Below, one piece after another: positions 1 through 32,608 of a stretch of DNA of 64,000 nucleotides. The notes beneath the pieces are model-generated. The model did no database searches and was not told the origin of the DNA. It saw nothing but the letters and a program-made list of their open reading frames with translations. A program made the translations under genes and the position numbers. Positions within the stretch are counted from its first letter, which is position 1. Each line of letters opens with the position of its first letter. The stretch is taken from positions 186,001 through 250,000 of the IMG/VR virus record IMGVR_UViG_3300042350_004528; one strand, given 5' to 3'.

Positions 1-313
1 AGTACTCACACGATAGGTCGCTTTTCTTTGCTACGATAGAGCCGTTAAAGCCGTCATTTACGGGCGTAAACCAATTTTCTTTGGCTACGAAGTCAGCCTC
101 TTTACCCTCACGAATACGGGCGTTATTCACCATATTTTGATAGTTAGCGTTTAACAACATATTGTAGTCAACTAACTTGGTGATAACGGCACTACGCAAA
201 GGGTTGCCCGTCTTTAACATTTTTTGTTCAACCACTGCTAATACTTGGGCGAACTTTGCACTGCCTCCGTCATTGATAAGGCTTGCGATTACTTGTGATT
301 TTTTGTTTTGCAT
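1..313 (-). CDS. Hypothetical protein (3'-truncated by window), paralogue of 10169..10684
   Basis: Manual translation MQNKKSQVIASLINDGGSAKFAQVLAVVEQKMLKTGNPLRSAVITKLVDYNMLLNANYQNMVNNARIREGKEADFVAKENW..; array promoter upstream; absent from ORF track. Confidence 0.88.
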   Translation of the reverse strand, partial: MQNKKSQVIASLINDGGSAKFAQVLAVVEQKMLKTGNPLRSAVITKLVDYNMLLNANYQNMVNNARIREGKEADFVAKENWFTPVNDGFNGSIVAKKSDLSCEY

Positions 314-399
314 ATCTGTTTGTTTTGATTTGATGATACAAATGTAGGTGTAATTTTTTTAACCCGCAAATTTTAACGCAAATTTTTTTATCTTTTTTT

Positions 400-498
400 T
401 TGTTTAACTTTTCGGGCAAAACATTAAACACAAAAAGTATCGTGTAGGTTGGAGTATACTCTCCCGACTTGTTCAGCCCGCCCGTTGTCTTTAACAAC
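400..498 (-). ncRNA. Putative structured small RNA 1 (three-way junction)
   Basis: Array promoter at 503-534 with no ATG-initiated ORF; stem CGGGCGGGC/GUUUUGCCCG enclosing GGAG-AGUAUA-CUCC and ACAC..GUGU hairpins. Confidence 0.55.
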
Positions 499-502
499 AA
501 TA

Positions 503-534
503 CAAAGGTAAATGAAATAAATTTAACTTGCAAA
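503..534 (-). promoter_or_regulatory. Array promoter (representative copy)
   Basis: TTTG(534-531)-20 nt-TACCTTTG(510-503). Confidence 0.85.
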
Positions 535-691
535 CTTTAACACAAATTTCTTTGTTTTTTTTTTGACTCATTTTAAGCCGTTTTAAGACACTCTAACAAC
601 TAAACCATACGAACATATACCTTTGTTCCTTTCGTTTAATCTGAGCATAAAAAAAGGGGCGATTTGCCCCTTTCTTTGTTTCTTGTTTACC

Positions 692-925
692 TTACCAAAC
701 CAAAACCGCTGGGTCTTCCGTTTGGGCGATTTGTTCCGCCTTTGTTTTTAACTCGGTCATTTGAGCGATTAAAACCTCATAGGTCGGTCTTTGATTTGTT
801 TTGTAACCCAAAATTCGTTTGGCACAATCCCTCGCTGAAATTCGGCTCATTTTCATTCCTGTTTTTTTCTCGAACTCTAAGCCGCGAAGGCATACTACGA
901 TTTGAAAAAGTGATGTTGTTGTCAT
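692..925 (-). CDS. Hypothetical protein, 77 aa
   Basis: Start corrected to MTTT after promoter and A-rich leader; terminator ~650-672. Confidence 0.8.
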   Translation of the reverse strand: MTTTSLFQIVVCLRGLEFEKKTGMKMSRISARDCAKRILGYKTNQRPTYEVLIAQMTELKTKAEQIAQTEDPAVLVW

Positions 926-989
926 TGTTTGTTTGTTTTGATAGTTCAAAGATAAACGAAATAAATTTAACTTGCAAATTTTAACATAA

Positions 990-1016
990 AAAAAAGGGGA
1001 ATTTCTTCCCCTTTCT
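990..1016 (-). terminator. Intrinsic terminator GGGGAA-GAAA-TTCCCC + U tract (similar copies ~1240, 2801, 6661, 17538; + strand ~25958)
   Basis: GC stem, GAAA tetraloop, flanking A/T tracts. Confidence 0.85.
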
Positions 1017-1032
1017 TTGTTTCTTGTTTACC

Positions 1033-1173
1033 TTAAAAATTTCTTCCCGAAATTTTATATTTGTCTTCTTTTGGATTACCCCAAAACCAATTGTTAAGTT
1101 TACGAACTATAACTATTGATAGCCAAATGGTAAGAAAAAATATGGGCAATCCGATAATAAAGAAATCTTTCAT
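1033..1173 (-). CDS. Small membrane protein, 46 aa
   Basis: MKDFFIIGLPIFFLTIWLSIVIV TM segment; own promoter and terminator. Confidence 0.75.
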   Translation of the reverse strand: MKDFFIIGLPIFFLTIWLSIVIVRKLNNWFWGNPKEDKYKISGRNF

Positions 1174-1282
1174 AGGTTTGTTTGTTTTGTTGATATAAAG
1201 ATAAGTTAAATTTATTTCATTTGCAAGTTTTAACATAAAAAAAGGGGAATTTCTTCCCCTTTGTTTGCATTAGCACTTTTGT

Positions 1283-1348
1283 TTACATTAGCACAGCCAT
1301 GATTAACAAAGCACCGCAAAAAAGCGTTAAGACGAATAGAATACTCAT
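1283..1348 (-). CDS. 21-aa hydrophobic peptide MSILFVLTLFCGALLIMAVLM
   Basis: Only ORF between an array promoter (1371-1401) and a terminator (~1240-1262). Confidence 0.62.
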   Translation of the reverse strand: MSILFVLTLFCGALLIMAVLM

Positions 1349-1465
1349 TGTTTATTTTGATTTGTTGATACAAAGATAAGTTAAATTTATTTCATTTGCA
1401 AGTTTTAACATAAAAAAAAGGGAACTTTTTTTGTTCCCTCTCTTTTGATCCACAACCCTATTCTT

Positions 1466-2017
1466 TTAATATGAACAACCTTTTGATTTAACAAAGGGAA
1501 TAAAAACCCCGAAGTTTGCACTAACTTGTTTTTGTGTGTTTATATCAACCCTAACCCAACCAACATAATAGTTAAGATACAAACCCCCAACCAAAGTGTT
1601 TATGTTTTTGCGACAACTTAAAACGCTGAACTCCCCGACACTTGTTTTTGTGTAGTTTGTGTATGTTTCTCTTTGATTAAAGTTTAACCCTGCGTGAACC
1701 CCAACCCGAACTGCGTTATCATTGTTCAACACTTTACCAACCAACAACTTTGTGTTTGTTTCTTTTGTTGATATGTTTCTAACCTCGTAATTGTTGTATT
1801 GTGGGTGTTGTTCGGGTGCAACATAATCATATTGAAACAAAGGTGCTTGTTCCCCTTGTTTAATACAACCATAAGAAACTGAACCATAGTAACCCCAATT
1901 GTTTGCGTCAACCCCCAGGGTTATATCGTTTAACTTTGTGTTTGTTCCTACCAACATTTGTCCGTTTGCAACCATTGAAGAAACTCCGAGTGCGATTGAG
2001 AAAATTAACTTTTTCAT
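1466..2017 (-). CDS. Secreted, putative outer-membrane beta-barrel-like protein, 183 aa
   Basis: Signal peptide MKKLIFSIALGVSSMVANG; alternating hydrophobic/aromatic strands. Confidence 0.65.
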   Translation of the reverse strand: MKKLIFSIALGVSSMVANGQMLVGTNTKLNDITLGVDANNWGYYGSVSYGCIKQGEQAPLFQYDYVAPEQHPQYNNYEVRNISTKETNTKLLVGKVLNNDNAVRVGVHAGLNFNQRETYTNYTKTSVGEFSVLSCRKNINTLVGGLYLNYYVGWVRVDINTQKQVSANFGVFIPFVKSKGCSY

Positions 2018-2119
2018 TTGTTTTGTTTGATTTGATAACACAAAGATATGTTAAATTTATTTCATTTGCAAATTTTAACATAAAAAAAGGGGACTTTTTT
2101 GTCCCCCTTTTTTGTTCGG

Positions 2120-2185
2120 TTAATCTAACTTGTTGCTGACAAACGAACCGATAGCAACAAGAATTAAAGCTATTAATAGTCCCAT
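2120..2185 (-). CDS. 21-aa hydrophobic peptide MGLLIALILVAIGSFVSNKLD
   Basis: Between gene 2192..2404 and its terminator; manual translation. Confidence 0.55.
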   Translation of the reverse strand: MGLLIALILVAIGSFVSNKLD

Positions 2186-2191
2186 AGTTTT

Positions 2192-2404
2192 TTATATGTT
2201 ATTTGTTTGACAAAACCTATCAAAATAGGCTTCTTCTTGGGCTTGAACATAACGAGATTCATCCGTTATTGTTTCACTTGGGGAATAACTTGGGTGGTAC
2301 GCTAATTTACGATTTACATCATAAACAATTGTGTCCCCCTTTTGTAGTCTTTTACCACTTGCGGCACATTTGCTACTGAATTTGGCTACGATTATTTTTA
2401 ACAT
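2192..2404 (-). CDS. Hypothetical protein, 70 aa
   Basis: Start corrected to MLKII. Confidence 0.8.
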   Translation of the reverse strand: MLKIIVAKFSSKCAASGKRLQKGDTIVYDVNRKLAYHPSYSPSETITDESRYVQAQEEAYFDRFCQTNNI

Positions 2405-2518
2405 TGTTTGTTTGTTTTGATAGTTCAAAGATAAACGAAATAAATTTAACTTGCAAATTTTAACATAAAAAAAGGGTAAATTTCTTTACCCCCTTTTCAA
2501 ACATTATGAACAACAAAT

Positions 2519-2746
2519 TTATTTTATCTTTTCCGCGAAATAGTTTACAACATCGGGAATGTGTTTTTTGTAGTACGGCTGATTTTCCATGCACCACTTT
2601 TTAACCTCTTCTTTTGTTGTGAAACCTTTGTTACCCCAACTTGAAGCGTTTGATTGAATTTGATTGAATGTTGGCTCCAAGTCGTTGATGAAGTCGCGAA
2701 CTGTCCAACCCTCCCAAATGTGTTTGTCTAAATTTACTTTTGCCAT
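2519..2746 (-). CDS. Hypothetical protein, 75 aa
   Basis: Start corrected to MAKVN. Confidence 0.82.
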   Translation of the reverse strand: MAKVNLDKHIWEGWTVRDFINDLEPTFNQIQSNASSWGNKGFTTKEEVKKWCMENQPYYKKHIPDVVNYFAEKIK

Positions 2747-2830
2747 TGTTTGTTTGATTTGTTGATGCAAAGATAAATGAAATAAATTTAACTTGCAAAT
2801 AAAAAGGGGAATTTCTTCCCCTTTCTTTTT

Positions 2831-3019
2831 TTAGTTATAAGCATCGCAAGTGTGGTGCTTGTGTCTTTCAGGTTTAATCGGTGCATAGTGTGTTTTGTAC
2901 GCATCGCACTGAACATACTTTGTGCGTTTTTTATGTTTCTTTAACTTGATACCATCGTTTGCAAAACTTGTTCCCGTTGCCATAACTGAAACCAACAATA
3001 AAATAAATAACTTTTTCAT
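2831..3019 (-). CDS. Small secreted basic protein with two CDAY motifs, 62 aa
   Basis: Signal peptide ending TSFA; QCDAYK and TCDAYN. Confidence 0.75.
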   Translation of the reverse strand: MKKLFILLLVSVMATGTSFANDGIKLKKHKKRTKYVQCDAYKTHYAPIKPERHKHHTCDAYN

Positions 3020-3132
3020 AGGGTTTGTTTTTGATTATGATGTAAAAGTATATAGATTAAATTTAATGTGCAAATTTTTTGCAAAAAAAAAGGAAGAAAT
3101 TTCTTTCTTCCAATTTTCGTATCAAATCAAAC

Positions 3133-3510
3133 TTAATCTTTCGTTACTTGCATTGTCTTTTCAAGCAACAATATTCGTGGTACAATGTACTCAACATATT
3201 CGGGTGTAAGTTGTTTGTTGTATATCTCCATAACAAAATCAACCGAAGGTGTTGCACCATAGAATGTTCCCAGCAAAACATTTGTTTCTTTGTGTCTTAT
3301 CTCGGTGTAACTTTCCTTTGTGGTTTTCGCCACTTTAATATCAAAGACACAACAAAATTCGGGGTCGGACTGCAAAGCGTTTAGTTTGGCTATATCCGTT
3401 TCGTTTGTGTAGTGAACCTCCAAAACAAGTTTGGGCTCTTTCGGGTTTGTACTCGCTTTAACTCCAACAAAGGTAGTTAAGCAAATGAGTGTTAAAAGTA
3501 TTTGTTTCAT
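3133..3510 (-). CDS. Secreted hypothetical protein, 125 aa
   Basis: Signal peptide ending VKA; ATG 4 nt after -7 box. Confidence 0.8.
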   Translation of the reverse strand: MKQILLTLICLTTFVGVKASTNPKEPKLVLEVHYTNETDIAKLNALQSDPEFCCVFDIKVAKTTKESYTEIRHKETNVLLGTFYGATPSVDFVMEIYNKQLTPEYVEYIVPRILLLEKTMQVTKD

Positions 3511-3546
3511 ACTACAAATATAAACATTTTATTTTTAATATGCAAA

Positions 3547-3699
3547 TTAAACTCTCCCCTCAATGATTGCCGCGAACCAAAGTGATGCGTAAAGAAACGC
3601 AGACATAAAAATCATAAAGGCGACTGAACCATAAAACTCTTTCGGATCTTCCTTGCGAAAATCATTCAGCGTGATGAACATTTCTTTAATATCTTTCAT
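3547..3699 (-). CDS. Small membrane protein, 50 aa
   Basis: Manual translation MKDIKEMF..YGSVAFMIFMSAFLYASLWFAAIIEGRV; own promoter. Confidence 0.72.
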   Translation of the reverse strand: MKDIKEMFITLNDFRKEDPKEFYGSVAFMIFMSAFLYASLWFAAIIEGRV

Positions 3700-3761
3700 T
3701 GTTTGTTTGTTTTTGTTGATACAAAGATAAGTGAAATAAATTTAACTTGCAAATTTTAATT

Positions 3762-3922
3762 CAAAAAAAGGGGAAATTTCTTTCCCCAATTAAATGCATT
3801 TTGCCTTTTTCTGTTTATTGACGGATTACAAAAGACAAACGTCATCCGTTCTCACCCACCTTATAAATCCTTCCCGTGCACGAAACAAGAAACTGGGGCG
3901 GGATTGTTTCTACTTGTTATTT
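3762..3922 (-). ncRNA. Putative small RNA 3 (~160 nt)
   Basis: Array promoter 3927-3958 and terminator ~3762-3790 bracket a GC-richer segment with no ORF at a normal start position; helices AAUCC/GGAUU and ACGGAU/AUCCGU. Confidence 0.5.
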
Positions 3923-3962
3923 AATACAAAGATAAACGAAATAAATTTAATGTGCAAATTTT

Positions 3963-4160
3963 TTACCAAGTGAAATCATTTTTATTCGCATTCAAAGAAA
4001 GGAATAAAATGAATAGAAACAATAAACCTGTTCCGAAGAAGAATGCAAACTCTTCGTTCTTGATGTAACCCTTTGATTGCAGGGCAAGTCCAACGCTTAC
4101 TCCAATGGTTATCAAACCAAGGATTGAAAGCACGAATGGGATAACTTTAACTTTTTTCAT
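3963..4160 (-). CDS. Two-TM membrane protein, 65 aa
   Basis: Start corrected to MKKVK; two hydrophobic helices. Confidence 0.78.
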   Translation of the reverse strand: MKKVKVIPFVLSILGLITIGVSVGLALQSKGYIKNEEFAFFFGTGLLFLFILFLSLNANKNDFTW

Positions 4161-4200
4161 ATTTTTTTGTTTTGATAGTTCAAAGATAAACGAAATAAAT

Positions 4201-4344
4201 TTAACTTGCAAACTTTTGTTTAAGTTTTTTTCGGTTATATGTTTTACCCGAAGGTTTGCTCCTTGTTATCATATTCCTACGAATGATTTGAGCAATGTGT
4301 CTTTCTGACAAACCTTGTTTCCAATCTTGTGTTTCGTTTTTCAT
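4201..4344 (-). CDS. Small basic protein, 47 aa
   Basis: Manual translation MKNETQDW..KLKQKFAS; stop lies inside the next promoter. Confidence 0.68.
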   Translation of the reverse strand: MKNETQDWKQGLSERHIAQIIRRNMITRSKPSGKTYNRKKLKQKFAS

Positions 4345-4382
4345 AACACAAAGATAAATGAAATAAATTTAATGTGCAAATT

Positions 4383-4724
4383 TTATTCTGCAAAATTATC
4401 TTTACCACATTCAGGACAAACTTTTTCCTCATACAAAGTATGGTCTTGTGGATTATGTTCGTTGTCAACCATTACCGATTTCAACTCATCCTTACCACCA
4501 ATCCAACCACAATTTTCGCAATAAAGGTCGTATTCAATTTCAATAACCTCATCAAAAATTTCCTTGTATTCAGTAACCAATTCTTTATCGGTGAAATTCG
4601 CATACCCTTTCATCCCGTATTCAAATATACTGGCAACATAACTATTGTCACCTCGTTCGTGTTCCGATATGATTGTGTTGATGTCGTTATCTACCAACTT
4701 GTCTATGATTTCCTGTCTTTTCAT
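4383..4724 (-). CDS. Hypothetical protein with C-terminal Zn ribbon, 113 aa
   Basis: CENC..CPEC. Confidence 0.8.
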   Translation of the reverse strand: MKRQEIIDKLVDNDINTIISEHERGDNSYVASIFEYGMKGYANFTDKELVTEYKEIFDEVIEIEYDLYCENCGWIGGKDELKSVMVDNEHNPQDHTLYEEKVCPECGKDNFAE

Positions 4725-4751
4725 AACTTAAAAGTTTTTCTTATATTGTAC

Positions 4752-4802
4752 TCATCGCCAACCTTGTTTAACTATTACGTTCTTTCTACCTTGCTTTCGC
4801 CA
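4752..4802 (-). pseudogene. Start-less remnant of the 3' end of a paralogue of 16275..16508
   Basis: WRKQGRKNVIVKQGWR* versus WIKQGKKNVIIKQGWQ*. Confidence 0.7.
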
Positions 4803-4806
4803 TATT

Positions 4807-4917
4807 TTAGTTATATCGTTGTTTACAAATCACCCAAATGCTATAAAGAATAAGTGGTGAAAAAAGAATTAATTGCCCCAAACAAACCATTCTTTGTCTT
4901 GCTGTTAATCTTTTCAT
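4807..4917 (-). CDS. 36-aa membrane peptide
   Basis: MKRLTARQRMVCLGQLILFSPLILYSIWVICKQRYN; ATG 4 nt after variant -7 box TATCTTTA. Confidence 0.6.
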   Translation of the reverse strand: MKRLTARQRMVCLGQLILFSPLILYSIWVICKQRYN

Positions 4918-4941
4918 AGTTTAAAGATAAGTTAAATAAAT

Positions 4942-5106
4942 TTAACTTGCAAACTTTGTTTCAATTTTTTTATCCCCAACAAAGTTATACCCAGAGTTAA
5001 ACCACCATAGGGCCAAACGGATTGACCAGTAAATGCTTCGTTTTTGTTTCCTTCCATTCAGATAGCATTCCCACGCTTTCCGAATTCTAAACTTGTTTAT
5101 TCGCAT
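4942..5106 (-). CDS. Hypothetical protein, 54 aa
   Basis: Manual translation MRINKF..ETKFAS; overlaps stop of upstream gene. Confidence 0.6.
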   Translation of the reverse strand: MRINKFRIRKAWECYLNGRKQKRSIYWSIRLALWWFNSGYNFVGDKKIETKFAS

Positions 5107-5315
5107 AATTCAACCTCAATGATTTCACAATAGTTTTCCAACTCGTCTAACGGAATTCTACCATAGTTCGTTGATGAATAGTAACCTTGAAACTCGTAAC
5201 GCTTCTTCCATTCAGTTAAGGCGTTCTTTGCTTCCTCAACACTATTGTAAGTGTCGCTGAAATGAATGCTAAACCCATCGGGACTTAACACATCGTATTG
5301 CTTGTTTGATTTCAT
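5097..5315 (-). CDS. Hypothetical protein, 72 aa
   Basis: ORF with array promoter. Confidence 0.82.
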   Translation of the reverse strand: MKSNKQYDVLSPDGFSIHFSDTYNSVEEAKNALTEWKKRYEFQGYYSSTNYGRIPLDELENYCEIIEVELCE

Positions 5316-5418
5316 AGTTCAAAGATAAGTGAAATAAATTTAACTTGCAAATTTTAATACAAAAAAAAGGGGCAGATTTCTCCGCCCACCTTTTTCAAAT
5401 ATGAAAACAAATCAAGTT

Positions 5419-5793
5419 CTATGAAAAGTAAGGTTGTATAACCTCTTTGTCGCTCAAATTAGCTCTCATCTTTGCATACGCTTCCGCTTCTTTATCATCT
5501 TTGTTATAGATGAAATCAACATTGCTTGAAGCGATTGCAAATTGTCCGTTCGCAATACCCCAAAAGTAATAACGAACATTGTCATTCACATCAACTGCAT
5601 TCAATGCCCTCTCGCAAACCTCGTTCAGTTCGGGGAATAACTTAACGCTTCCCGTGATACTTGAAACGATTGCAAGTTTCATACTGCCGTTGGCGAATTC
5701 ATCAGCTACCTTGTTCTCACCAATGTTTCTTAAACCCTCAATAAGGATTTGTTTGTAGCTACCCGAAGGTGCTTTTGGAAATGGATTGTTCAT
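5419..5793 (-). CDS. Hypothetical protein, 124 aa
   Basis: ORF, promoter, terminator. Confidence 0.85.
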   Translation of the reverse strand: MNNPFPKAPSGSYKQILIEGLRNIGENKVADEFANGSMKLAIVSSITGSVKLFPELNEVCERALNAVDVNDNVRYYFWGIANGQFAIASSNVDFIYNKDDKEAEAYAKMRANLSDKEVIQPYFS

Positions 5794-5835
5794 ATCGTTT
5801 TGTTTTTTGATACAGCAAAGATAAGTGTAATAAAT

Positions 5836-6006
5836 TTAACTCGCAAGTATTTTTTTAATTTCTTTTAATCGATCCAAAACTTTATCCATTTCTTTTGAAA
5901 TCTTTGTGTGGGTTCTATGTTTGCTATTAGGTTCCCACAACTCGGACAAAGTTTTATATCGTTCTTTGAGCCGTATCTCCTCAACAATCAATACCGAATG
6001 TTCCAT
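5836..6006 (-). CDS. Hypothetical protein, 56 aa
   Basis: Start corrected to MEHS; ends ILAS inside next promoter. Confidence 0.72.
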   Translation of the reverse strand: MEHSVLIVEEIRLKERYKTLSELWEPNSKHRTHTKISKEMDKVLDRLKEIKKILAS

Positions 6007-6008
6007 TG

Positions 6009-6212
6009 TTAATTCAGTATTGATTGGTAAGGGATTGGAAATTCCAAGAAAGGTGCGGACAACCATTTGTCAATTTTGATTGTCTTGTCGGTAATCTTTT
6101 CCTTTCGGTAAACCTTTACGCAAGTTTCCAAGTTTTCATCAGCGAATATGGTTTCGGTGCTTTCATCATCATTTGTGCGAAATACCTCGTACCAAGTTTT
6201 TGTGTTTTCCAT
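6009..6212 (-). CDS. Hypothetical protein, 67 aa
   Basis: ORF with array promoter. Confidence 0.78.
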   Translation of the reverse strand: MENTKTWYEVFRTNDDESTETIFADENLETCVKVYRKEKITDKTIKIDKWLSAPFLEFPIPYQSILN

Positions 6213-26037: not shown

Positions 26038-26607
26038 ATGAAGTTACTTAATTTTGTGATGGTCGCCAAACACCTGACAGGTGACAGCGAAGTTTATTTC
26101 TTTCCTACAAAGGAGGAAGCAAGAACATTCTACAACAACAGAGTTAAACCGCTGTTGGATATTTGTATGAAGAACGAATTGGAGGAAGATGAGGCGTACT
26201 CATTCGGACAAACCAAAGATTGTGTTCGTTTCGATTGTGGTTACGATGAGGAACTTGATGCGATGCTTAACGAGTGTAATCATTACTATCGTGTGGACAG
26301 CGTTGAAGTTCCTGAAAATGTTACACACTATGTGGCTGACTTTTCCGAGTGGGTTGATGAGAGTGTTATCGAGTTCCACACCGAACAACAGGCAAAGGAA
26401 GTTTGGAACGATAAGATTGATGAGGAAATCAGGTTGGCTTCCGAGTATCATGGGATTGAGATTAGCAGACATCACCAAGAAACTTGGGAAGATAAATCAG
26501 GTATGACCTTGTTTCAGGAAACACATTACAGCGATATGTATTCCGATGCTTACTTTGGTCATTCAATGGATATGACTTGGACATTCAGGATTGGACAAAT
26601 AAATTAA
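26038..26607 (+). CDS. Hypothetical protein, 189 aa
   Basis: Start corrected to MKLLN. Confidence 0.83.
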   Translation: MKLLNFVMVAKHLTGDSEVYFFPTKEEARTFYNNRVKPLLDICMKNELEEDEAYSFGQTKDCVRFDCGYDEELDAMLNECNHYYRVDSVEVPENVTHYVADFSEWVDESVIEFHTEQQAKEVWNDKIDEEIRLASEYHGIEISRHHQETWEDKSGMTLFQETHYSDMYSDAYFGHSMDMTWTFRIGQIN

Positions 26608-26611
26608 TCTT

Positions 26612-26839
26612 ATGGCGATAAAAATCATTTACTACTCGGAGGTTATAGATAACTGGGGTAGAACAGAAAGTTCAATGAAAGGTGATATCATCTTCGCGGC
26701 CCTGAACAATGTTGAGGACTGGACTGACGATATGATGTTCGAGGGTGATGACGGTCGCAAGTATTCAATAGATGAGCTTGCAGGTAAAGAAGTTTGTGTA
26801 CCAGACATCGGGATATTCACCGTACCAGAAGAAGAATAA
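26612..26839 (+). CDS. Hypothetical protein, 75 aa
   Basis: ORF track. Confidence 0.78.
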   Translation: MAIKIIYYSEVIDNWGRTESSMKGDIIFAALNNVEDWTDDMMFEGDDGRKYSIDELAGKEVCVPDIGIFTVPEEE

Positions 26840-26896
26840 TTAACGGGGCTTAAAAGCCCCTTTATTTTTTTATCTGGGACGTTATATTTATCATGG

Positions 26897-27379
26897 ATGG
26901 TGAAGTCCCAGATTTTAAATGAGAGATCTTTTGATATAACAGACGGTGAACGATATTTAATTGTCGTGATCACCCCAGATAGATCGTACTCAGTTTTCAC
27001 CAGAAAGTACCAGAGCAAACCAGTTGTCTCTGTGGAATTCAAAGAAGCAAAACTTTATAAGGAGCTGAAGACAGCTCAGAATGTTGTGAAGGAAATCTTC
27101 CAGAACAATGAACACTACCAGGAATCTGTAATAAAGATATTCCAGGTGAAGGATCTATTCGAACCCAGATATTTTGTACAGTATATTAAAAAAGCTTACA
27201 TGAATTCTCCTGAGCTTAAGTGTTACATCGACTGGTACGTGATCGGCGAGAACCAGGTTGATACTTATCTGGATTACAGCGAAGCTCAAAAACATCTGGA
27301 CAAATACAAACGCGATCTACTTGAATTCTATTACAGCCAGATCATGAACATCAGGAGCTTCGACTTAAAAAAAATATAA
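26897..27379 (+). CDS. Hypothetical protein, 160 aa
   Basis: Preceded by TATTTAT rather than the array promoter. Confidence 0.8.
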   Translation: MVKSQILNERSFDITDGERYLIVVITPDRSYSVFTRKYQSKPVVSVEFKEAKLYKELKTAQNVVKEIFQNNEHYQESVIKIFQVKDLFEPRYFVQYIKKAYMNSPELKCYIDWYVIGENQVDTYLDYSEAQKHLDKYKRDLLEFYYSQIMNIRSFDLKKI

Positions 27380-27435
27380 AAAAAAACGGCTCCATTTCTG
27401 GAACCGTCTCTTCACCACTAAATCAAAAACAAAAA

Positions 27436-27702
27436 TCAATACTGGTAGTATGTGTATTCAATTGTGTCCCCCACCCTGTAACGGGCATGTTGAGGATCAA
27501 CTGTAACTGGAGCTGTGCTGTCCCAGAATTCATATCGGTAGCGCTTCTTGTAATTCAGTGTTGTTGGATCGTACTGTTCGATCGTGTCAACTTTCTTAAT
27601 CACATGTGGCACCACATGAATTGACTTCGGTGGTCTCTGGACACACCCTGTCACCAGGACAGTGAATACAAATATTAGTTTACGCACCTTTGGTAAATAC
27701 AT
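27436..27702 (-). CDS. Putative lipoprotein (start uncertain)
   Basis: LIFVFTVLVTGC lipobox. Confidence 0.65.
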   Translation of the reverse strand: MYLPKVRKLIFVFTVLVTGCVQRPPKSIHVVPHVIKKVDTIEQYDPTTLNYKKRYRYEFWDSTAPVTVDPQHARYRVGDTIEYTYYQY

Positions 27703-27913
27703 CTGGGTTTTCAAAATCAGTTTCAGTATCCAGAAACATGAATGAATCCTCCAACTCCTCATCGGTGAGTTTAACATCTTCCGACAAAGAATTCAGAAAG
27801 TCCATTGCTTCCCGTTTGCTGTTGAAATACTTGTAGTCTGTGTTGTCCTCATTCATAAGGTACTCCAAACCATTTAACGATATGCCCTCAATGGGTCTTC
27901 CAATTATTATCAT
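27680..27913 (-). CDS. Hypothetical protein, 77 aa
   Basis: GRPIEGISLNGLEYL; leaderless-type start. Confidence 0.82.
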   Translation of the reverse strand: MIIIGRPIEGISLNGLEYLMNEDNTDYKYFNSKREAMDFLNSLSEDVKLTDEELEDSFMFLDTETDFENPDVFTKGA

Positions 27914-27991
27914 ATGACAAAGGTAATTTAAATTTATTTAATATGCAAGAAACTGGGGAAGTTTTTTTCTCCCCCAGTTAATTTTATTACA

Positions 27992-28837
27992 TTATTCCCA
28001 AGGTGTATCAAAGTTATCGAATGGGTTTTCTGGGAAGCAAGAGTTCTCATCATTCCATTCTTCTTCCGAAATTACATTTCCGTCCTCACCAACATAAACT
28101 CTTTGTTCAACATTGTAGTTATATACAACGCCATCCAAAACATATTCTGGTTCACCCTCCGCTAACATAAGTTCACCATCCTCGCTGTAAGCACAACCCG
28201 CGAACCAGTTTCCAGTTTCCATAAACACCAGTTTGAAGTTCAAGTTCGGAAACATTTTGATAACTTTTCCCAACCAGTTGATTGGTGGCGACCAGGCGGA
28301 GTTGAAGTTAATTGTAATATAGTTTTCGTTATCTGTATCGAAACCCATTTCCTCTGACGAGCAATCCCACTTTGTTCCCCAGTTCATAACATTCCAGTCG
28401 TACCAGTTGTCAGTCCCATACTCTTCAATAAGAGCCTCTCGCTTCTCTTCTGTACCATTGGCACATTCAATTAGTTCTGGAATTTCAATTGGTATCTTTG
28501 CTTCATTCAATTGGTTGTTGATGAAGTCCCTGTCGGTTTTGTCTGTGGTCTCCAGAAGTTTTTTCTCCAGATCAGCGATCAACTCTTGTTGTTTCTCGAT
28601 ACGATTTTTTGCGTGGTTCACATCCCACTCGTTCACCCATTCACAATCACGAGGTGGTGATATGGTTCTGGAAAGTGGTTCTGGTGTCGGTAAGTAGTTC
28701 GACATTCTCCAGACAAGTTCTGTTTCACCTGTTTTGCTGTAACGCACAGGTTCTTCGGTAATTCCCATTGCAAGGAATTGTTTGAATTCTTTGGTATCAC
28801 CCGATACCTCTAAACGATTTTCGCACCAGTTTGGCAT
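27992..28837 (-). CDS. YubB/DUF1281 ferredoxin-like domain protein
   Basis: MPNWCEN, WYDW..NWGTKW, FNSAWSPP. Confidence 0.82.
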   Translation of the reverse strand: MPNWCENRLEVSGDTKEFKQFLAMGITEEPVRYSKTGETELVWRMSNYLPTPEPLSRTISPPRDCEWVNEWDVNHAKNRIEKQQELIADLEKKLLETTDKTDRDFINNQLNEAKIPIEIPELIECANGTEEKREALIEEYGTDNWYDWNVMNWGTKWDCSSEEMGFDTDNENYITINFNSAWSPPINWLGKVIKMFPNLNFKLVFMETGNWFAGCAYSEDGELMLAEGEPEYVLDGVVYNYNVEQRVYVGEDGNVISEEEWNDENSCFPENPFDNFDTPWE

Positions 28838-28979
28838 AGTATATTGTTTTTGATTTCGAGAGCAAATATACACCATATATTTTTAACTCGCAAACTTTAT
28901 CACAAAAAACTTTTTTCATTTTTATTTGCACATTAAATTTATTGCACTTATCTTTGTGTCGAAATCAAAAATAAAAATC

Positions 28980-29723
28980 ATGTTTAATCTAGGGTACACG
29001 TACAAGAAGCCTACCACACTGTTTGGTACGCAGAATGCAAAGACAAAGAAAGGTGAAAAACTGGGGTATACAACCTATATCCTGTATATGTCACCAGAAA
29101 AACAAAACACGCTTGGCAAGAACATTTGCCCGAAAGCCACAGCAGGCTGTTCGAAGTCATGTCTCTTCACAGCGGGTCGTGGCAAGTTTAGCAATGTCAT
29201 GAAAGGTCGTCTGAATAAGACTGAATACTTTCTTCGTGACAAGGTGAACTTCATGGACGATGTTGTTAAGGAAATTAAAAAGGGTATTAAAAAACATGGT
29301 GCGGGTGCAATGTGCGTTCGTCTCAATGGTACCTCTGATATTCCTTACGAGAACATTCCAGTGGGTGGTTTTAAAAATGTCATGGAAATGTTTCCTGATG
29401 TGCAATTTTACGATTACACAAAGATCTATTCAAGGTTGACAAAGCAATTGCCTGCGAACTATCACCTTACCTTTTCCAGGGCGGAGACAGAGGACAACCA
29501 ACGCGAAGCGGACAAAGCACTCGCACTTGGTTTCAATGTCGCTGTTGTTTTCGCTGTTAAGGACGAGACAGAACTTCCCGCTGAATACAACAATGCAAAG
29601 GTTATCAATGGTGACGAGCACGATCTTACTTTCTTACATGGCAATGGTGTTGTCGTGGGGTTGAAAGCAAAGGGTGAAGCAAAGAAAGATGATACAGGTT
29701 TCGTAGTAAGGGGTTGTAACTAA
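28980..29723 (+). CDS. Gp88-like phage protein (Cys cluster, radical-SAM-like)
   Basis: CPKATAGCSKSCL, RLNGTSD, FYDYTK, NYHLTFS, GLKAKG. Confidence 0.78.
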   Translation: MFNLGYTYKKPTTLFGTQNAKTKKGEKLGYTTYILYMSPEKQNTLGKNICPKATAGCSKSCLFTAGRGKFSNVMKGRLNKTEYFLRDKVNFMDDVVKEIKKGIKKHGAGAMCVRLNGTSDIPYENIPVGGFKNVMEMFPDVQFYDYTKIYSRLTKQLPANYHLTFSRAETEDNQREADKALALGFNVAVVFAVKDETELPAEYNNAKVINGDEHDLTFLHGNGVVVGLKAKGEAKKDDTGFVVRGCN

Positions 29724-29784
29724 CCCCTTATTTTTTTTTGCATTCAGACTTGCAAGTTAAATTAAATTCATATACCTTTGTCAT

Positions 29785-30102
29785 ATGAAAGCAAAACAAA
29801 ACAATTATCCAAAGTTTATCATCCGTTGGAACGGTCGATTCCATAAGGGTCTGATAACCGAAGACTTCGTCTTCTACTGTAACTACCAGGAAGGAGATGA
29901 TAACGGCAATGTTGAGATGTATCGCAGGGTTGAATCTAACCCGCATGACAGGGACAACAGCGGGCTAGAATTGGTATCGAACAATTACTTTGCTAGCGTT
30001 GGTCTCTTCGAAGCGCTCGAGGCGGGCGTCTGGGAATACATCTCACCAACCATGAAACTGAATTATAAACTAGCAAAAGAAGCGGGACAATTCGATGAGT
30101 AA
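29785..30102 (+). CDS. Hypothetical protein, 105 aa
   Basis: Leaderless-type start. Confidence 0.8.
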   Translation: MKAKQNNYPKFIIRWNGRFHKGLITEDFVFYCNYQEGDDNGNVEMYRRVESNPHDRDNSGLELVSNNYFASVGLFEALEAGVWEYISPTMKLNYKLAKEAGQFDE

Positions 30103-30406
30103 GAAAGAAAGAAAAATATACGAGACCTCTGTAATATACAGAGGGTACCAGACATTTAAACTGTGCTGGGCCACCTCATATGCTGAAGCTGCCAGGATCT
30201 TGGATGTGGCCCCTAGTTACCTTAAGAATTACGGCCTGTCTTATAAACGCGATCGGGATTTTGACTTCGAGGGTTGTTATGGGTATATCGATTCAGGTGA
30301 GATCATCTTTGGTGAACCAGGACGACCTGATCTGATGAGAAAACTTATGCCATGGGCGGAGTTGACGGAGATCGTTGATACTTATATTAAAGAGAAATAC
30401 GAATGA
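30095..30406 (+). CDS. Hypothetical protein, 103 aa
   Basis: Coupled ORF. Confidence 0.75.
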   Translation: MSKKERKIYETSVIYRGYQTFKLCWATSYAEAARILDVAPSYLKNYGLSYKRDRDFDFEGCYGYIDSGEIIFGEPGRPDLMRKLMPWAELTEIVDTYIKEKYE

Positions 30407-30768
30407 GACCAGAATTCAAGATATACAGGAATCTACACAGAGACTGTTTCAGTGTGATGAGATGGAACCAGGAGAAGAGAGGGTACCGTCTGTATCAGCA
30501 TGTCAAGGATCTAGAAGCTTACGGCGTAACGTTCAGGGTATCTCAGGCTGGACGGGCCAGGGTTCTGGAGACGAAGCAAAAGAATGTACATGCATTCGTA
30601 TGCTGCCAAGAATTCAAGCTTGCTTCTGGGGCCGCGAACCTGGGTGAGGAGATCTACTACAATCCATACAAGATGGAAACGTTCAGGATCAAGAGCTCGG
30701 ACGAATCGATTCTGAATGCAGATTCGGTTATCATGACGAATAATAAATGTTATTTAAATGTGATCTGA
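30403..30768 (+). CDS. Phage hypothetical protein, 121 aa
   Basis: YRNLH..FSV, KNVHAFV, YNPY. Confidence 0.82.
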   Translation: MRPEFKIYRNLHRDCFSVMRWNQEKRGYRLYQHVKDLEAYGVTFRVSQAGRARVLETKQKNVHAFVCCQEFKLASGAANLGEEIYYNPYKMETFRIKSSDESILNADSVIMTNNKCYLNVI

Positions 30769-30772
30769 ATTC

Positions 30773-31324
30773 ATGGGCGGAGATGAGAGAAGCGCGATAG
30801 AAGTGATCGCTGAATTCACGTCACCATTTGAGGATTCACTTAACGTGTTAATCCTAGGTGATCATATAGATGATCTTGAGGCTGCTGAAGTAAAGGCGGC
30901 GTTCGATCGAACCAGGAATGAATTCCTGAGTCTGCCATCGGTGGACGAGGAGAAGATGGCCCCGATCAAATATATTAAAATTAATACATCCGAATTTTTC
31001 AGGGGGAAGATCAGTAATAAAATTAAGAAGGAACCCTGTGTTGTATATCTGGATCACGAGCTCAGCAAAAATGCTTTGAACATCCTCACCAATAATAACA
31101 GTGAGGTGGATGATCTGGAGGAAATGCTTCTGGAGAAATATCTTTTCGGGATCAACCAGGAAAAATTTATTCTGGATCTCACCAGCTGTCTGGATGAAAG
31201 GATCGAACTTCTCATGAGTGCCATGGACGCCAGAGCTGGGGAATTCAATTATGTTCTGGTGGAAAAGTATCTGGCGATCTGGATATATGCGCTTGACGAA
31301 TTCGCCCCATTTCAGTTCGATTAA
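30773..31324 (+). CDS. Hypothetical protein, 183 aa
   Basis: ORF track. Confidence 0.75.
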   Translation: MGGDERSAIEVIAEFTSPFEDSLNVLILGDHIDDLEAAEVKAAFDRTRNEFLSLPSVDEEKMAPIKYIKINTSEFFRGKISNKIKKEPCVVYLDHELSKNALNILTNNNSEVDDLEEMLLEKYLFGINQEKFILDLTSCLDERIELLMSAMDARAGEFNYVLVEKYLAIWIYALDEFAPFQFD

Positions 31325-31386
31325 AAAAAAGATAAAAAAAGTTTCAAAAAAACTTGCATAATAAAAAAAGTTGTATTACATTTGTA

Positions 31387-31470
31387 GTCCTTAAGAGTTC
31401 AGGCCTGGGAGGCAACCCTTTCTCTCTGTTTTGTTTTTGATTTCAAAAAGTCCTCCCAGGTTCTGTTCTC
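31387..31470 (+). ncRNA. Putative small RNA 4 (hairpin with anti-leader loop)
   Basis: Array-type promoter 31353-31384 with no ORF; CCUGGGAGG(31404-12)/CCUCCCAGG(31452-60) stem; loop UUUUGUUUUUGAUUUC. Confidence 0.62.
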
Positions 31471-31609
31471 GAATTCAAGTTTAAGTTTCTACTAGAATTC
31501 AACCCCGTATAATTTTTAGAATTCATATTGCTGGATCTTCCAGAATTCATATCCGTAACTTTTTTAGAATTCATATATAAATAAAAAAGGTGAACCCTTT
31601 TAGAATTCA
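31471..31609. repeat. GAATTCA repeats at 24-bp period
   Basis: GAATTCA at 31471, 31495, 31519, 31543, 31567, then 31603. Confidence 0.9.
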
Positions 31610-31634
31610 CCTTTCAGTTTTTTTATGTATTCAC

Positions 31635-31892
31635 TTATTCGTCATCCGCTTCTTTCTTGCGTCTGGTCTTTCTGGTTGGTAAACCTCTTTTCTCACGTAT
31701 CCTGTCCCTGAGTTCCATCACCTTCAGGATGGCTGTGATCACCGCGATGAAAAGACCGAGGATCACACCGATCAATTGTAGGAGATCTGTTGCACTCATG
31801 GTGATTGATAACATTGATGATAATATTCCGTATTCAGGTTTTTTAGTTAGTGTATCCGTTAATTGGGTGATGAGTGTGTCCTTCATTTTCAA
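31635..31892 (-). CDS. Holin-like small membrane protein
   Basis: TM helix followed by very basic tail; ACTATTTAT upstream. Confidence 0.5.
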   Translation of the reverse strand: MKMKDTLITQLTDTLTKKPEYGILSSMLSITMSATDLLQLIGVILGLFIAVITAILKVMELRDRIREKRGLPTRKTRRKKEADDE

Positions 31893-32037
31893 TACTGTTT
31901 TTGTTTATTTTTTTGTATACAAATAAATAGTATGAATGAATAGAAAACGCCCGTTGTTAACTCGAATACATTATTTTTTTTTAAAAAAATTTGCACATTA
32001 AATTTTAATGTGTTATCTTTGATTAAATTAAAATAAT

Positions 32038-32331
32038 ATGAATGCAATAAATACAGCCTATACATTGGGTTTGGTCGCCATGTATTTTATCATGGGCGGA
32101 GAATTCACATTCTGGGTGTTCATGACCTCGGTCTTGATCGCACTGATTCCACTGACAACTTCGAACCTGTTATTCGCGACCCCGATCGTGGTTCTGATCT
32201 GGTGTTTCTTTTTCACCAGCAGTACAGTTTACGATTCCGACTTCGCGTGGTTATGCATCCTGTATGCACCCTTCCATTACACCTCATTCATATCCCATGT
32301 CATAGACGCCATCGAGGGCATTTTCGATTAA
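32038..32331 (+). CDS. Multi-TM membrane protein, 97 aa
   Basis: Hydrophobic; last array promoter 31990-32021. Confidence 0.78.
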   Translation: MNAINTAYTLGLVAMYFIMGGEFTFWVFMTSVLIALIPLTTSNLLFATPIVVLIWCFFFTSSTVYDSDFAWLCILYAPFHYTSFISHVIDAIEGIFD

Positions 32332-32409
32332 ATTTACGCCGTTTTTTTAATAATTTAAAAAAAATATATCGAAAACTGTCGAGGGGCTCAAATTTTTTTC
32401 ACTTGTTCC

Positions 32410-32462
32410 TGGGTGGGAAATGGGATTTTGTGGGGGTAAGTGGGGGATTGTGGGAAATAGTG
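32410..32462 (+). repeat. TGGG repeats at 10-bp period
   Basis: TGGG at 32421, 32431, 32441, 32451, plus 32410 and 32414. Confidence 0.85.
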
Positions 32463-32608
32463 TAAGTAACTGATTATCAGGTAATTCAGTGACTGTCAGT
32501 GAGTTATCTGAATGCACTCATTTTCAGTCAGTTGCGGGTATGTGTGTTTCTCGGCAGAATTCACATGGGATCCTGGGCAATATAATGTAAAATGAATGCA
32601 TTTTAAGG

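What the first reader, a model, noticed from the sequence alone, without database searches (positions are those of the whole stretch)
1..32600. Stepwise gradient of GATC, CCAG/CTGG and GAATTC usage along the array
Seen (manual, approximate): about 9 GATC in 1-18.5 kb versus about 21 in 30.1-31.3 kb alone. CCAG/CTGG is rare on the left and dense from ~26.8 kb, while CCTG/CAGG dominates 19-26 kb. Inference: restriction-site avoidance in first-injected DNA (as in staged-entry phages), and/or deliberate enrichment of a methylation or binding motif peaking at the 31.5-kb hub.
Basis: partly seen in the sequence, partly recalled or inferred. Interest (0 to 1): 0.6.

Follow-up and report, generated by a model that had tools for sequence, protein, structure and literature searches.

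The report
Restriction-site desert in phage early genes
In a 299-kb uncultured lake-water phage, a block of about 65 small early genes has been stripped, in sharp steps, of the short palindromes that restriction enzymes cut; this most likely marks DNA that must survive in the host before the phage's counter-defences work.

Summary
The window is part of a 298,833-bp IMG/VR jumbo-phage contig from lake metagenomes.

Window 1-31,400 is an array of about 70 small unrelated genes. Each has its own Bacteroidota-type promoter, and many have a terminator hairpin.

Against synonymous-codon shuffles, nine G/C-containing 4-mer palindromes scored per gene fall in steps:
- Block A (to 18.44 kb): observed/expected 0.17
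- Block B (18.5-26.84 kb): 0.51
- Block C (26.9-31.4 kb): 1.06
- Rest of the genome: 0.86

In A the nine most depleted of 136 tetramers are all palindromes. Interrupted palindromes (ACNGT, GANTC, CTNAG and others) and many hexamers are purged too. B lacks mainly GATC and ACGT. CCGG is absent from the whole genome.

The edges are sharp. They recur in relatives of 70-80% identity, including in cassettes with no homologue here.

Best reading: selection by Type II restriction on pre-early DNA, as in T5 first-step-transfer DNA and T7-like leading regions, but far stronger and tiered. Entry order itself is unproven, because only contigs were available.

The proposed "enrichment" is weak for GATC and CCWGG. 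A phased AGAATTCA iteron cluster at 31.5 kb is real and conserved.

The parts
1..18440 (-). Block A. It starts about 208 bases left of the window. It holds 47 small, mutually unrelated minus-strand genes, each behind its own Bacteroidota-type promoter, many followed by a G-rich terminator hairpin. It is a near-complete desert for 10 tetranucleotide palindromes, for 6 interrupted palindromes and for many hexamer palindromes.
   Evidence: depletion: 39 observed vs 228.5 expected for nine palindromes; 26 of 47 genes have none, 4.5 expected. (41-copy promoter repeat). (no paralogy apart from one pair). (51 terminator-like sites vs 11.7 in shuffles).
18441..18575 (.). Back-to-back divergent promoters between blocks A and B. 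Several IMG/VR contigs of relatives end within about 1 kb of this point.
18576..26839 (+). Block B. It holds 18 plus-strand small genes behind the same promoter type. GATC (6 vs 27.3) and ACGT (0 vs 16.3) are purged, and AGCT and GCGC are partly purged. TCGA, CATG and GGCC are tolerated. CCTG/CAGG are over-represented through CTG and CAG codon contexts, and GAATTC is over-represented (11 vs 5.3).
   Evidence: DUF932 at 25,124-25,936 and DUF4241 at 23,035-23,649.
26840..26896 (+). The sharp right-hand step: a terminator hairpin after the last B gene. The next gene has no canonical early promoter.
26897..31324 (.). Block C. It has mixed-strand genes at GC 0.41-0.45 and includes homologues of mycobacteriophage L5 gp88 and gp82 and an Api92-like protein. 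There is no palindrome avoidance except CCGG. GATC is at 1.65-fold and CCAGG at 3.1-fold of the codon-corrected expectation.
29785..31324 (+).
   Evidence: (21 vs 12.0 +/- 2.4).
31330..31634 (.). Non-coding 'hub' where the plus-strand B-C block meets the long minus-strand block. It has GAATTC(A) sites at 31,471, 31,495, 31,519, 31,543 and 31,567 (24-bp phase) and at 31,603.
   Evidence: The same phased array is present in relative G001.
31635..32600 (.). Hub-proximal small genes and a G-rich non-coding stretch. GATC is still dense, there are three more GAATTCA sites, and the last array-type plus-strand promoter lies at about 31,976.

Best explanation
The gradient is the footprint of selection by host Type II restriction enzymes on the phage's pre-early DNA.

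The array (window -208 to 31,400) is a T4-style hyperplastic region built of promoter-gene-terminator cassettes, read by the host's sigma-A RNA polymerase. Blocks A and B are DNA that is exposed, and must work, before the phage's counter-defence is in place. Any restriction site there is lethal and has been removed by synonymous and non-synonymous change.

Sites elsewhere are tolerated because something made early shields the rest of the genome. The avoidance falls into three tiers:
- Whole genome: CCGG, CTGCAG, CGTACG, ACGCGT, CTATAG.
- A and B: GATC and ACGT, and partly AGCT and GCGC.
- A only: TCGA, CATG, CTAG, GGCC, CGCG, plus ACNGT, AGNCT, CGNCG, CTNAG, GANTC, GGNCC and many hexamers.

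The tiers would then reflect which enzyme classes are neutralised never, late or early.

My favoured sub-mechanism, at about 0.4 on its own, is ordered DNA entry as in T5 or T7-like phages, with A leading. The likeliest physical end is the sharp left edge at genome position about 185.5-185.8 kb.

Shown: the depletion, its palindrome specificity, its sharp edges, its conservation, and the host-type promoters.
Inferred: restriction as the selective agent, the entry order, and an early anti-restriction function.
For: 1. Depletion survives codon-preserving shuffles and Markov correction.
2. It is specific to palindromes. In A the nine lowest of 136 tetramers are all palindromes (Mann-Whitney p = 5e-7). 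Interrupted palindromes are hit selectively: ACNGT 5/32.5, CGNCG 0/15.5, GANTC 5/26.2 and CTNAG 7/28.4, but not CANTG, TCNGA or TGNCA. Hexamers are hit too, for example GTTAAC 0/9.3. A selective list of this kind is what particular enzyme specificities predict.
3. The array genes are unrelated to one another, so the desert is not one duplicated site-poor unit.
4. The desert is unique in the genome. The lowest 8-gene window elsewhere scores 0.51, against 0.06 inside A.
5. Relatives at 70-80% identity with shuffled gene order keep the desert and its left edge at the syntenic gene. Their cassettes with no match here are also depleted, 55 vs 187.
6. 55 of the 61 genome-wide matches to the extended promoter (TTGC N3 TTAAA N9-13 TAnnTTTG) lie in window -400 to 32,100. 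TAnnTTTG is the flavobacterial sigma-A -7 box (PMC9723704).
7. Position matters, not promoter class. Genes behind the same promoter in C and at three sites elsewhere are not depleted.
8. The principle is established experimentally for T5 and for T7-like Murciavirus (PMC12455610).
9. The layout mirrors T5 first-step-transfer DNA: a leftward block, then a rightward block, then a repeat-rich non-coding stop region.
10. No methyltransferase or TGT-type modification gene was found that could protect the bulk genome instead.
Against: - No genome end could be determined. The contig closes on itself and only contigs of public runs were available.
- The large terminase belongs to the T4 gp17 family, whose classical members package headfuls with random ends. 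PMC12455610 itself notes that leading-region avoidance should not apply to such phages. This is softened by phage CBB, whose terminase is related (E = 3.5e-22) and which has a 22.5-kb terminal repeat.
- Block C carries the same promoters but shows no avoidance.
- The first 3 kb of B is less depleted than the rest of B, so the pattern is not a smooth function of distance from any single end.
- No recognised anti-restriction gene was found. ArdA is absent. Only DUFs, a SprT-like protein and a ParB-like protein were detected.
- Neither comparator with a small-gene array (CBB terminal repeat, Flavobacterium phage immuto) shows such a desert.
Confidence: 0.6

Rival explanations
1. There is no ordered entry. 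The phage packages headfuls, so any part can enter first. The purge protects the cassettes whose products are needed first. Each self-contained promoter-gene-terminator unit without sites stays expressible even after the genome has been cut elsewhere. This buys time for inhibitors, end protection and religation.
For: - The terminase is of the T4 gp17 type and the assembly is circular.
- Every array gene is an independent unit.
- Many array proteins are strongly acidic and are possible DNA mimics, for example net charge -38 at 12,058-12,711.
Against: - Genes behind the same early promoter in C and elsewhere are not purged.
- The block edges are sharp and positional.
- Rescue of a 299-kb genome cut at hundreds of sites has no precedent that I know of.
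Confidence: 0.2
2. It is a compositional legacy. The cassettes of A and B circulate by promoter-mediated recombination in a gene pool shared with other phages or elements that are under strong genome-wide avoidance. On this view the tiers record different donors, not a position-specific pressure in this phage.
For: - Gene order inside the array is shuffled between relatives.
- A-C have higher GC (0.35-0.41) than the genome (about 0.32).
- The pattern inside B is patchy.
Against: - All detected homologues of A cassettes in relatives again lie in the A-type array.
- The depletion is uniform over 47 unrelated genes, and 26 of them have no site at all.
- The whole-genome CCGG ban also holds inside A-C, so these genes have long evolved in this lineage.
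- A pool-wide purge would itself still need a selective cause.
Confidence: 0.1
3. The gradient is driven by enrichment, not depletion. GATC, CCWGG and GAATTC are placed around the 31.5-kb hub as methylation or protein-binding sites.
For: - Codon-corrected excess in C: GATC 35 vs 21.2 (z 4.3), CCAGG 13 vs 4.2 (z 5.2), GAATTC 13 vs 8.3.
- AGAATTCA sites are phased at 24 bp and conserved in G001.
- 15 of the 18 GAATTC sites in 27.5-32.6 kb are followed by A (p = 4e-6).
Against: - The enrichment cannot explain the 4- to 20-fold deficits in A and B.
- Individual GATC sites are conserved at the neutral rate, and no CCWGG site is conserved.
- No phage methyltransferase was found.
- The left flank of A is GATC-rich only through its composition (27 vs 23.7).
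- Only the GAATTCA cluster looks like a real binding array, and that is a separate feature.
Confidence: 0.08
4. It is an artefact of base composition, amino-acid content or codon usage.
For: A-C differ in GC content and strand from their surroundings.
Against: Two independent null models fail to remove the pattern. Non-palindromic tetramers in A have a median observed/expected of 1.02.
Confidence: 0.02

Closest known systems
First-step-transfer (FST) DNA of phage T5
   Same: - It is a pre-early block of small genes behind strong host-type promoters.
- A leftward block faces the end, followed by a rightward block and then a repeat-rich non-coding stop region.
- Its size is about 8% of the genome, against 6.3% for A and 10.6% for A-C.
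- It lacks EcoRI sites. Gaining one makes T5 restriction-sensitive (as cited in PMC12455610).
   Different: - T5 FST shows only mild overall depletion: 12 G/C-containing tetramer palindromes at 301 vs 382, or 0.79. By the same measure A scores 201 vs 468, and the total would be far lower without TGCA, which sits in the promoter.
- T5 has proven fixed ends inside a 10-kb terminal repeat. Here the ends are unknown.
- No A1 or A2 homologues were found here.
Leading-region motif avoidance in T7-like Murciavirus (PMC12455610)
   Same: The location of a restriction motif, not its presence, decides sensitivity. The leading region is hypervariable and presumed to carry anti-defence genes.
   Different: That case involves one Type I motif in a 40-kb podovirus with transcription-driven entry. 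Here at least 20 Type II-like words are purged over 19-27 kb of a 299-kb genome, in tiers.
PeSL (promoter-early stem-loop) hyperplastic regions of T4-like phages (PMC2839356, PMC4122927)
   Same: - Small ORFan genes are separated by a conserved composite of terminator hairpin and early promoter.
- Cassette order is shuffled between relatives.
- The terminase is of the T4 type.
   Different: A term search of the 2014 PeSL paper found no mention of site avoidance. The host here is a Bacteroidota member, with TTTG/TAnnTTTG promoters.
Terminal-repeat small-gene arrays of Rak2/CBB-like jumbo phages
   Same: About 50 small spaced genes lie in a 22.5-kb terminal repeat, including a DUF932 homologue of the B gene at 25,124-25,936. 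The terminase is related.
   Different: The CBB repeat has no general palindrome deficit (808 vs 813), only a ban on GCGC seen throughout the 50 kb examined. A terminal repeat is not demonstrated here.
Leading regions of conjugative plasmids
   Same: They are the first DNA to enter and are rich in anti-defence genes (PMC11541004).
   Different: A survey of 1,751 plasmids found no consistent palindrome depletion in leading regions (PMC13478746). The signal here is extreme.

Membership tests
Leading-region (FST-type) restriction-site avoidance | Restriction-type sites are depleted in one region relative to the rest of the same genome, after composition and codon correction | tested here: met
   A 0.17, B 0.51, C 1.06, rest 0.86.
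Leading-region (FST-type) restriction-site avoidance | The region lies at a fixed physical end of virion DNA and enters first | not testable with these tools
   The contig is circular by a 126-nt overlap. All 24 public runs are kept as contigs. Contig depth rises 1.7-2.1-fold at A's left edge in three runs, but alternative joins are present and no right edge was seen.
Leading-region (FST-type) restriction-site avoidance | The region is transcribed by unmodified host RNA polymerase immediately after entry | tested here: inconclusive
   By sequence only. 55 of the 61 extended TTTG/TAnnTTTG promoters cluster here, and the consensus matches flavobacterial sigma-A. No expression data exist for the array. 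The one RNA contig that was laid fell outside it.
Leading-region (FST-type) restriction-site avoidance | The region encodes a function that protects the later DNA | tested here: inconclusive
   No ArdA and no named anti-restriction family. Only SprT-like, ParB-like, DUF932, DUF3846, DUF6915 and DUF4241 were found. Many proteins are acidic. PDB and Atlas look-ups were uninformative.
PeSL-type hyperplastic region of T4-like phages | A conserved terminator-hairpin plus early-promoter composite lies between small ORFs | tested here: met
   (families D1-D6 and D11, in which the hairpin directly abuts the promoter). (51 terminator-like sites vs 11.7 expected).
PeSL-type hyperplastic region of T4-like phages | Cassettes are shuffled, gained or lost between close relatives | tested here: met
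   (G002 has a different order and 34% unmatched sequence)..
PeSL-type hyperplastic region of T4-like phages | The phage belongs to the T4 superfamily | tested here: inconclusive
   Only the terminase was tested. It has 26-30% identity to gp17-type terminases of cyanomyoviruses and of Flavobacterium phage immuto.
Methylation-motif cluster (Dam/Dcm-type, as at origins) | A cognate methyltransferase is encoded by the element | tested here: not met
   PF01555, PF00145, PF02086 and PF05869 are all absent. A host enzyme cannot be excluded.
Methylation-motif cluster (Dam/Dcm-type, as at origins) | Sites are conserved in position beyond the neutral rate | tested here: not met
   GATC 11/35 (the neutral expectation at 75% identity is about 0.31). 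CCWGG 0/14.
Long direct terminal repeat of jumbo phages | Two-fold read depth with sharp edges, and read starts at the repeat ends | tested here: inconclusive
   Depth steps up at the left edge (X1 8.3 to 17.4, X2 6.8 to 11.3, X16 about 3.3 to 5.2). The higher depth continues past the hub, and strain-variant joins exist.

The most novel reading that the evidence does not exclude
The phage has no fixed leading end, consistent with headful packaging by its T4-type terminase. The desert then reveals a different principle: a restriction-proof early programme. It would be built of about 65 autonomous, site-free promoter-gene-terminator cassettes that keep being expressed even after the incoming 299-kb genome has been cut. 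The tiers would rank the cassettes by how soon their products are needed.
Probability: 0.15. Interest if true: 0.8.

Novelty: new variant of a known kind. Interest (0 to 1): 0.6.

Why it matters
It would extend sub-genomic restriction avoidance, so far shown for T5 and small T7-like phages, to a jumbo phage of freshwater Bacteroidota. It does so in a form strong enough to read from sequence alone: at least 20 site classes removed from 19 kb, with base-sharp edges.

If the edges mark entry stages, sequence statistics could predict:
- the leading end and the injection pauses of uncultured phages;
- the restriction enzymes they meet most often;
- where their unknown anti-restriction genes lie, among about 65 ORFans.

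If the phage turns out to package headfuls, the pattern needs a new explanation.

Tried and rejected
- **Codon and composition artefact.** Rejected by two null models.
- **Duplication of one site-poor unit.** Rejected, because the array genes are not paralogous.
- **A discrete long motif behind CCTG/CAGG in B.** None found. The occurrences are CTG and CAG codon contexts.
- **CCAG/CTGG depletion in A as CCWGG avoidance.** Not supported: CCAGG 3/2.4 and CCTGG 2/3.4. It is spread over several pentamers.
- **Genome ends.**
  - There is no terminal repeat in the contig apart from a 126-nt assembly overlap.
  - IMG/VR contig ends are scattered, with a loose cluster at 18.4-19.5 kb and two near the left edge.
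  - Read laying gave only contig depths. Its loose ends at the left edge lead to sequences not in this genome.
- **Protection of the bulk genome by modification.** No methyltransferase and no TGT were found. A ThyA-family enzyme scores as an ordinary thymidylate synthase.
- **Function of the array proteins.** Pfam and PHROGs gave DUFs only. PDB sequence searches and the protein atlas gave nothing usable.
- **Distant relatives via the ParB-like protein.** Only near-identical strains were found.
- **Generality.** The CBB terminal repeat and 50 kb of Flavobacterium phage immuto show no desert.
- **Other checks.** Rfam finds only a tRNA in the window. Megablast against phage isolates finds only an NAMPT gene fragment.
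- **Not run.** The large protein searches, structure prediction and complex prediction were not used. They would not bear on the k-mer claim.

Full report
**What the window is.** The window is bases 186,001-250,000 of a single 298,833-bp IMG/VR virus record with a CheckV completeness of 100%. Nineteen lake or freshwater metagenome runs hold this stretch nearly letter for letter. The contig closes on itself through a 126-nt overlap followed by an adapter-like tail. GC is 34% overall. The only nucleotide match to an isolated phage is a fragment of an NAMPT gene.

**Check of the observation.** There are 9 GATC in 1-18,500 and 21 in 30,100-31,300. The CCAG/CTGG, CCTG/CAGG and GAATTC steps are also present.

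I tested the steps against a maximal-order Markov expectation. I also tested them against 200 shuffles that permute synonymous codons within each gene, which keeps every protein sequence, each gene's codon usage and all intergenic DNA. The steps remain:

| Block | GATC observed / expected | Ratio |
|---|---|---|
| A | 9 / 37.0 | 0.24 |
| B | 6 / 27.3 | 0.22 |
| C | 35 / 21.2 | 1.65 |
| Elsewhere | - | about 0.8 |

**The pattern is much wider than the three words noticed.**

In block A (window -208 to 18,440), ten of the sixteen tetranucleotide palindromes are depleted:

| Word | Observed / expected |
|---|---|
| ACGT | 2 / 35.8 |
| AGCT | 6 / 27.5 |
| CATG | 9 / 29.3 |
| CCGG | 0 / 10.8 |
| CGCG | 9 / 20.8 |
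| CTAG | 0 / 10.1 |
| GATC | 9 / 37.0 |
| GCGC | 0 / 14.3 |
| GGCC | 2 / 8.2 |
| TCGA | 7 / 40.9 |

GTAC, TGCA and TTAA are not depleted, and AATT only slightly (0.82).

- Ranked among all 136 strand-merged tetramers, the nine most depleted are all palindromes. Non-palindromes have a median ratio of 1.02.
- Interrupted palindromes are hit selectively: ACNGT 5/32.5, AGNCT 5/25, CGNCG 0/15.5, CTNAG 7/28.4, GANTC 5/26.2 and GGNCC 1/5.6. CANTG, TCNGA and TGNCA are not.
- Many hexamer palindromes are missing, for example GTTAAC 0/9.3.

Block B (18.5-26.84 kb) lacks GATC and ACGT (0/16.3) and partly lacks AGCT and GCGC, but it keeps TCGA, CATG and GGCC. Block C (26.9-31.4 kb) avoids only CCGG.

The whole genome has no CCGG (247-290 expected), no CTGCAG, CGTACG or ACGCGT, and a single CTATAG.

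Summed per gene over nine palindromes:

| Block | Observed / expected | Ratio |
|---|---|---|
| A | 39 / 228.5 | 0.17 |
| B | 79 / 155.7 | 0.51 |
| C | 120 / 113.7 | 1.06 |
| Other 315 genes | 3488 / 4066 | 0.86 |

No other part of the genome comes close. The steps fall between adjacent genes, at window -355/-208 and at 26,839/26,897.

**Anatomy of the array.** Window -208 to 31,400 holds about 70 small genes. There are 47 on the minus strand (A). These are followed by 18 on the plus strand (B), diverging from back-to-back promoters at 18.44-18.58 kb, and then by a mixed block (C).

- Nearly every gene has its own copy of a 35-nt promoter, TTGC N3 TTAAA N9-13 TAnnTTTG. Of the 61 genome-wide matches, 55 lie in this 32 kb. 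TAnnTTTG is the -7 box of flavobacterial sigma-A (PMC9723704). The host is therefore a Bacteroidota member and these are host-polymerase (early) units.
- G-rich hairpin terminators directly abut the next promoter. There are 51 terminator-like sites against 11.7 in shuffles.
- The proteins are unrelated to one another and almost all are of unknown function. The only family hits are SprT-like, ParB-like, DUF932, DUF3846, DUF6915 and DUF4241. In C there are homologues of mycobacteriophage L5 gp82 and gp88 and an Api92-like domain.
- Many array proteins are strongly acidic.
- The architecture is that of the promoter-early stem-loop (PeSL) hyperplastic regions of T4-like phages (PMC2839356, PMC4122927). 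The large terminase is of the gp17 family.

**Relatives.** A promoter pattern search in IMG/VR returned near-identical strains and relatives of 70-80% nucleotide identity.

- The relatives have the same desert.
- In a 71.7-kb contig (G002) the gene order inside the array is shuffled. The desert nevertheless ends abruptly at the gene syntenic with our left edge.
- Stretches of the relatives' arrays with no nucleotide match to this genome are equally poor in sites, 55 observed against 187 expected.
- The purge is therefore actively maintained in the array context across the lineage, not inherited once.

**Mechanism.** Selective loss of palindromes and interrupted palindromes, with some spared, is the classical signature of avoiding particular Type II restriction enzymes.

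The loss is confined to one block while hundreds of the same sites are tolerated elsewhere. So the rest of the genome must be shielded by something that does not cover A and B. The established precedent is temporal.

- In T5, the first-step-transfer DNA lacks EcoRI sites, and gaining one makes the phage sensitive.
- In T7-like Murciavirus, only motifs in the leading region matter (PMC12455610).

The T5 record shows the same layout at one-third scale: a leftward pre-early block facing the end, a rightward block, and then a repeat-rich injection-stop region. Here that corresponds to A, then B-C, then the non-coding hub at 31.33-31.63 kb.

Position rather than promoter class decides the purge. 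Genes behind the same promoter in C and at three other sites are not depleted.

I therefore favour restriction-driven purging of pre-early DNA, with ordered entry led by A as the most likely sub-mechanism.

**What weakens this reading.**
- Entry order is not shown. No ends could be mapped, and gp17-type terminases classically give random ends. However, phage CBB has a related terminase. It also has a 22.5-kb terminal repeat made of about 50 small spaced genes, including a DUF932 homologue of a B gene.
- Contig depths from three runs rise 1.7-2.1-fold exactly at A's left edge. This fits a collapsed terminal repeat. But the higher depth continues past the hub, and alternative joins lead to sequences absent from this genome. 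A strain-variable left flank explains it as well.
- The pattern is not a smooth gradient. The first 3 kb of B is less depleted than its remainder, and C is not depleted at all.
- No known anti-restriction gene was recognised.

- In C, GATC (1.65-fold), CCAGG (3.1-fold) and GAATTC (1.6-fold) exceed codon-corrected expectation. About half of the raw GATC excess is amino-acid and codon content.
- Individual GATC sites are conserved in a 75%-identical relative only at the neutral rate (11/35). No CCWGG site is conserved (0/14), although the densities persist.
- No DNA methyltransferase family is encoded.
- GAATTC behaves differently. It is depleted genome-wide (0.23-0.35), yet 33 of its 64 sites lie in window 19.4-32.9 kb.
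- From 27.5 kb on it is nearly always GAATTCA (15 of 18; p = 4e-6).
- Five copies are phased at exactly 24 bp in the hub. The same phased array exists in the relative.
- That is a credible protein-binding array, but it is a separate feature from the desert.

**How unusual is it?** By the same Markov measure:

| Comparator | Result | Call |
|---|---|---|
| T5 first-step-transfer DNA | 0.79 of expectation | 72 |
| CBB terminal repeat | No general deficit | 94 |
| 50 kb of the closest cultured relative by terminase and DUF932 (Flavobacterium phage immuto), including its small-gene array | No desert | 98 |
| 1,751 conjugative plasmids, leading regions | No consistent palindrome depletion | PMC13478746, |

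The principle is known. The magnitude, the number of specificities, the tiering and the setting (a T4-related jumbo phage of Bacteroidota) are not.

**Verdict.**
- The restriction-avoidance interpretation is well supported.
- "First-injected DNA" is plausible but untested.
- "Methylation-motif enrichment" is not supported.
- The finding is a new variant of a known kind and of moderate to high interest.

Noticed in passing
whole genome (G000), including window 1-64000: CCGG is completely absent from 298,833 bases (247-290 expected). CTGCAG, CGTACG and ACGCGT are also absent, and CTATAG occurs once. This is a genome-wide ban, distinct from the regional desert.
   Followed up: partly
window 31471-31609: GAATTC(A) sites lie at 31,471, 31,495, 31,519, 31,543 and 31,567 (exact 24-bp phase) and at 31,603, in the non-coding convergence point. 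The same 24-bp-phased AGAATTCA array is present in a 75%-identical relative. It may be an iteron or operator array.
   Followed up: partly
window 19400-32900 versus the rest of the genome: GAATTC is under-represented genome-wide (0.23-0.35 of the codon-corrected expectation) but over-represented in B and C. In total, 33 of the 64 genomic sites lie in 13.5 kb.
   Followed up: partly
L038:5355-5800 (genome 185,355-185,800; window about -645 to -200): The left edge of the desert carries several features. There are three copies of a CCCCAGAAATTTTTT motif found nowhere else in the genome, a G-tract-rich stretch, and an inverted pair of perfect DnaA-box-like nonamers that forms the terminator of the last array gene. 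Contig depth steps up 1.7-2.1-fold here in three runs.
   Followed up: partly
genome 139,000-156,000 (outside the window): A segment with GC 0.42-0.47 has internal repeats of about 72-76% identity spanning some 10 kb. It is extremely rich in CCTG/CAGG and GTAC and nearly free of TTAA and AATT. It is probably one giant repetitive gene.
   Followed up: no
genome ends (positions 1-126 and the last 144 bases): The first 126 bases recur near the contig's end, followed by about 20 bases resembling an Illumina P5 adapter. IMG/VR classes the record as linear, but it assembles as a circle.
   Followed up: partly
window 32390-32470: A non-coding stretch of repeated GTGGG/GGGG units lies just right of the hub. 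There is no Rfam match.
   Followed up: no
window 48288-49817 and 52066-52139: A nicotinamide phosphoribosyltransferase gene shares 75% nucleotide identity over 340 bases with Tenacibaculum phages PTm1 and PTm5. A tRNA-Met (CAT) is also present.
   Followed up: no
window 12058-12711, 23035-23646, 26038-26604, 27995-28876: These array proteins are unusually acidic (net charge -24 to -38, pI about 4.1-4.5). They are candidate DNA mimics, and no family or structure match was found for the one examined further.
   Followed up: partly
L038:3070-3282 (genome 183,070-183,282): The one freshwater metatranscriptome run that was laid on the stretch placed a single 213-nt contig here, inside a 618-aa gene left of the array. 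The same run also shares about 8% of the sampled words of window 22-32 kb, and that part was not located.
   Followed up: no
NC_041878 (Pectobacterium phage CBB) 1-50000: GCGC is absent from the 50 kb examined (0 vs 44.7 expected in the terminal repeat alone), while other palindromes are at expectation.
   Followed up: no
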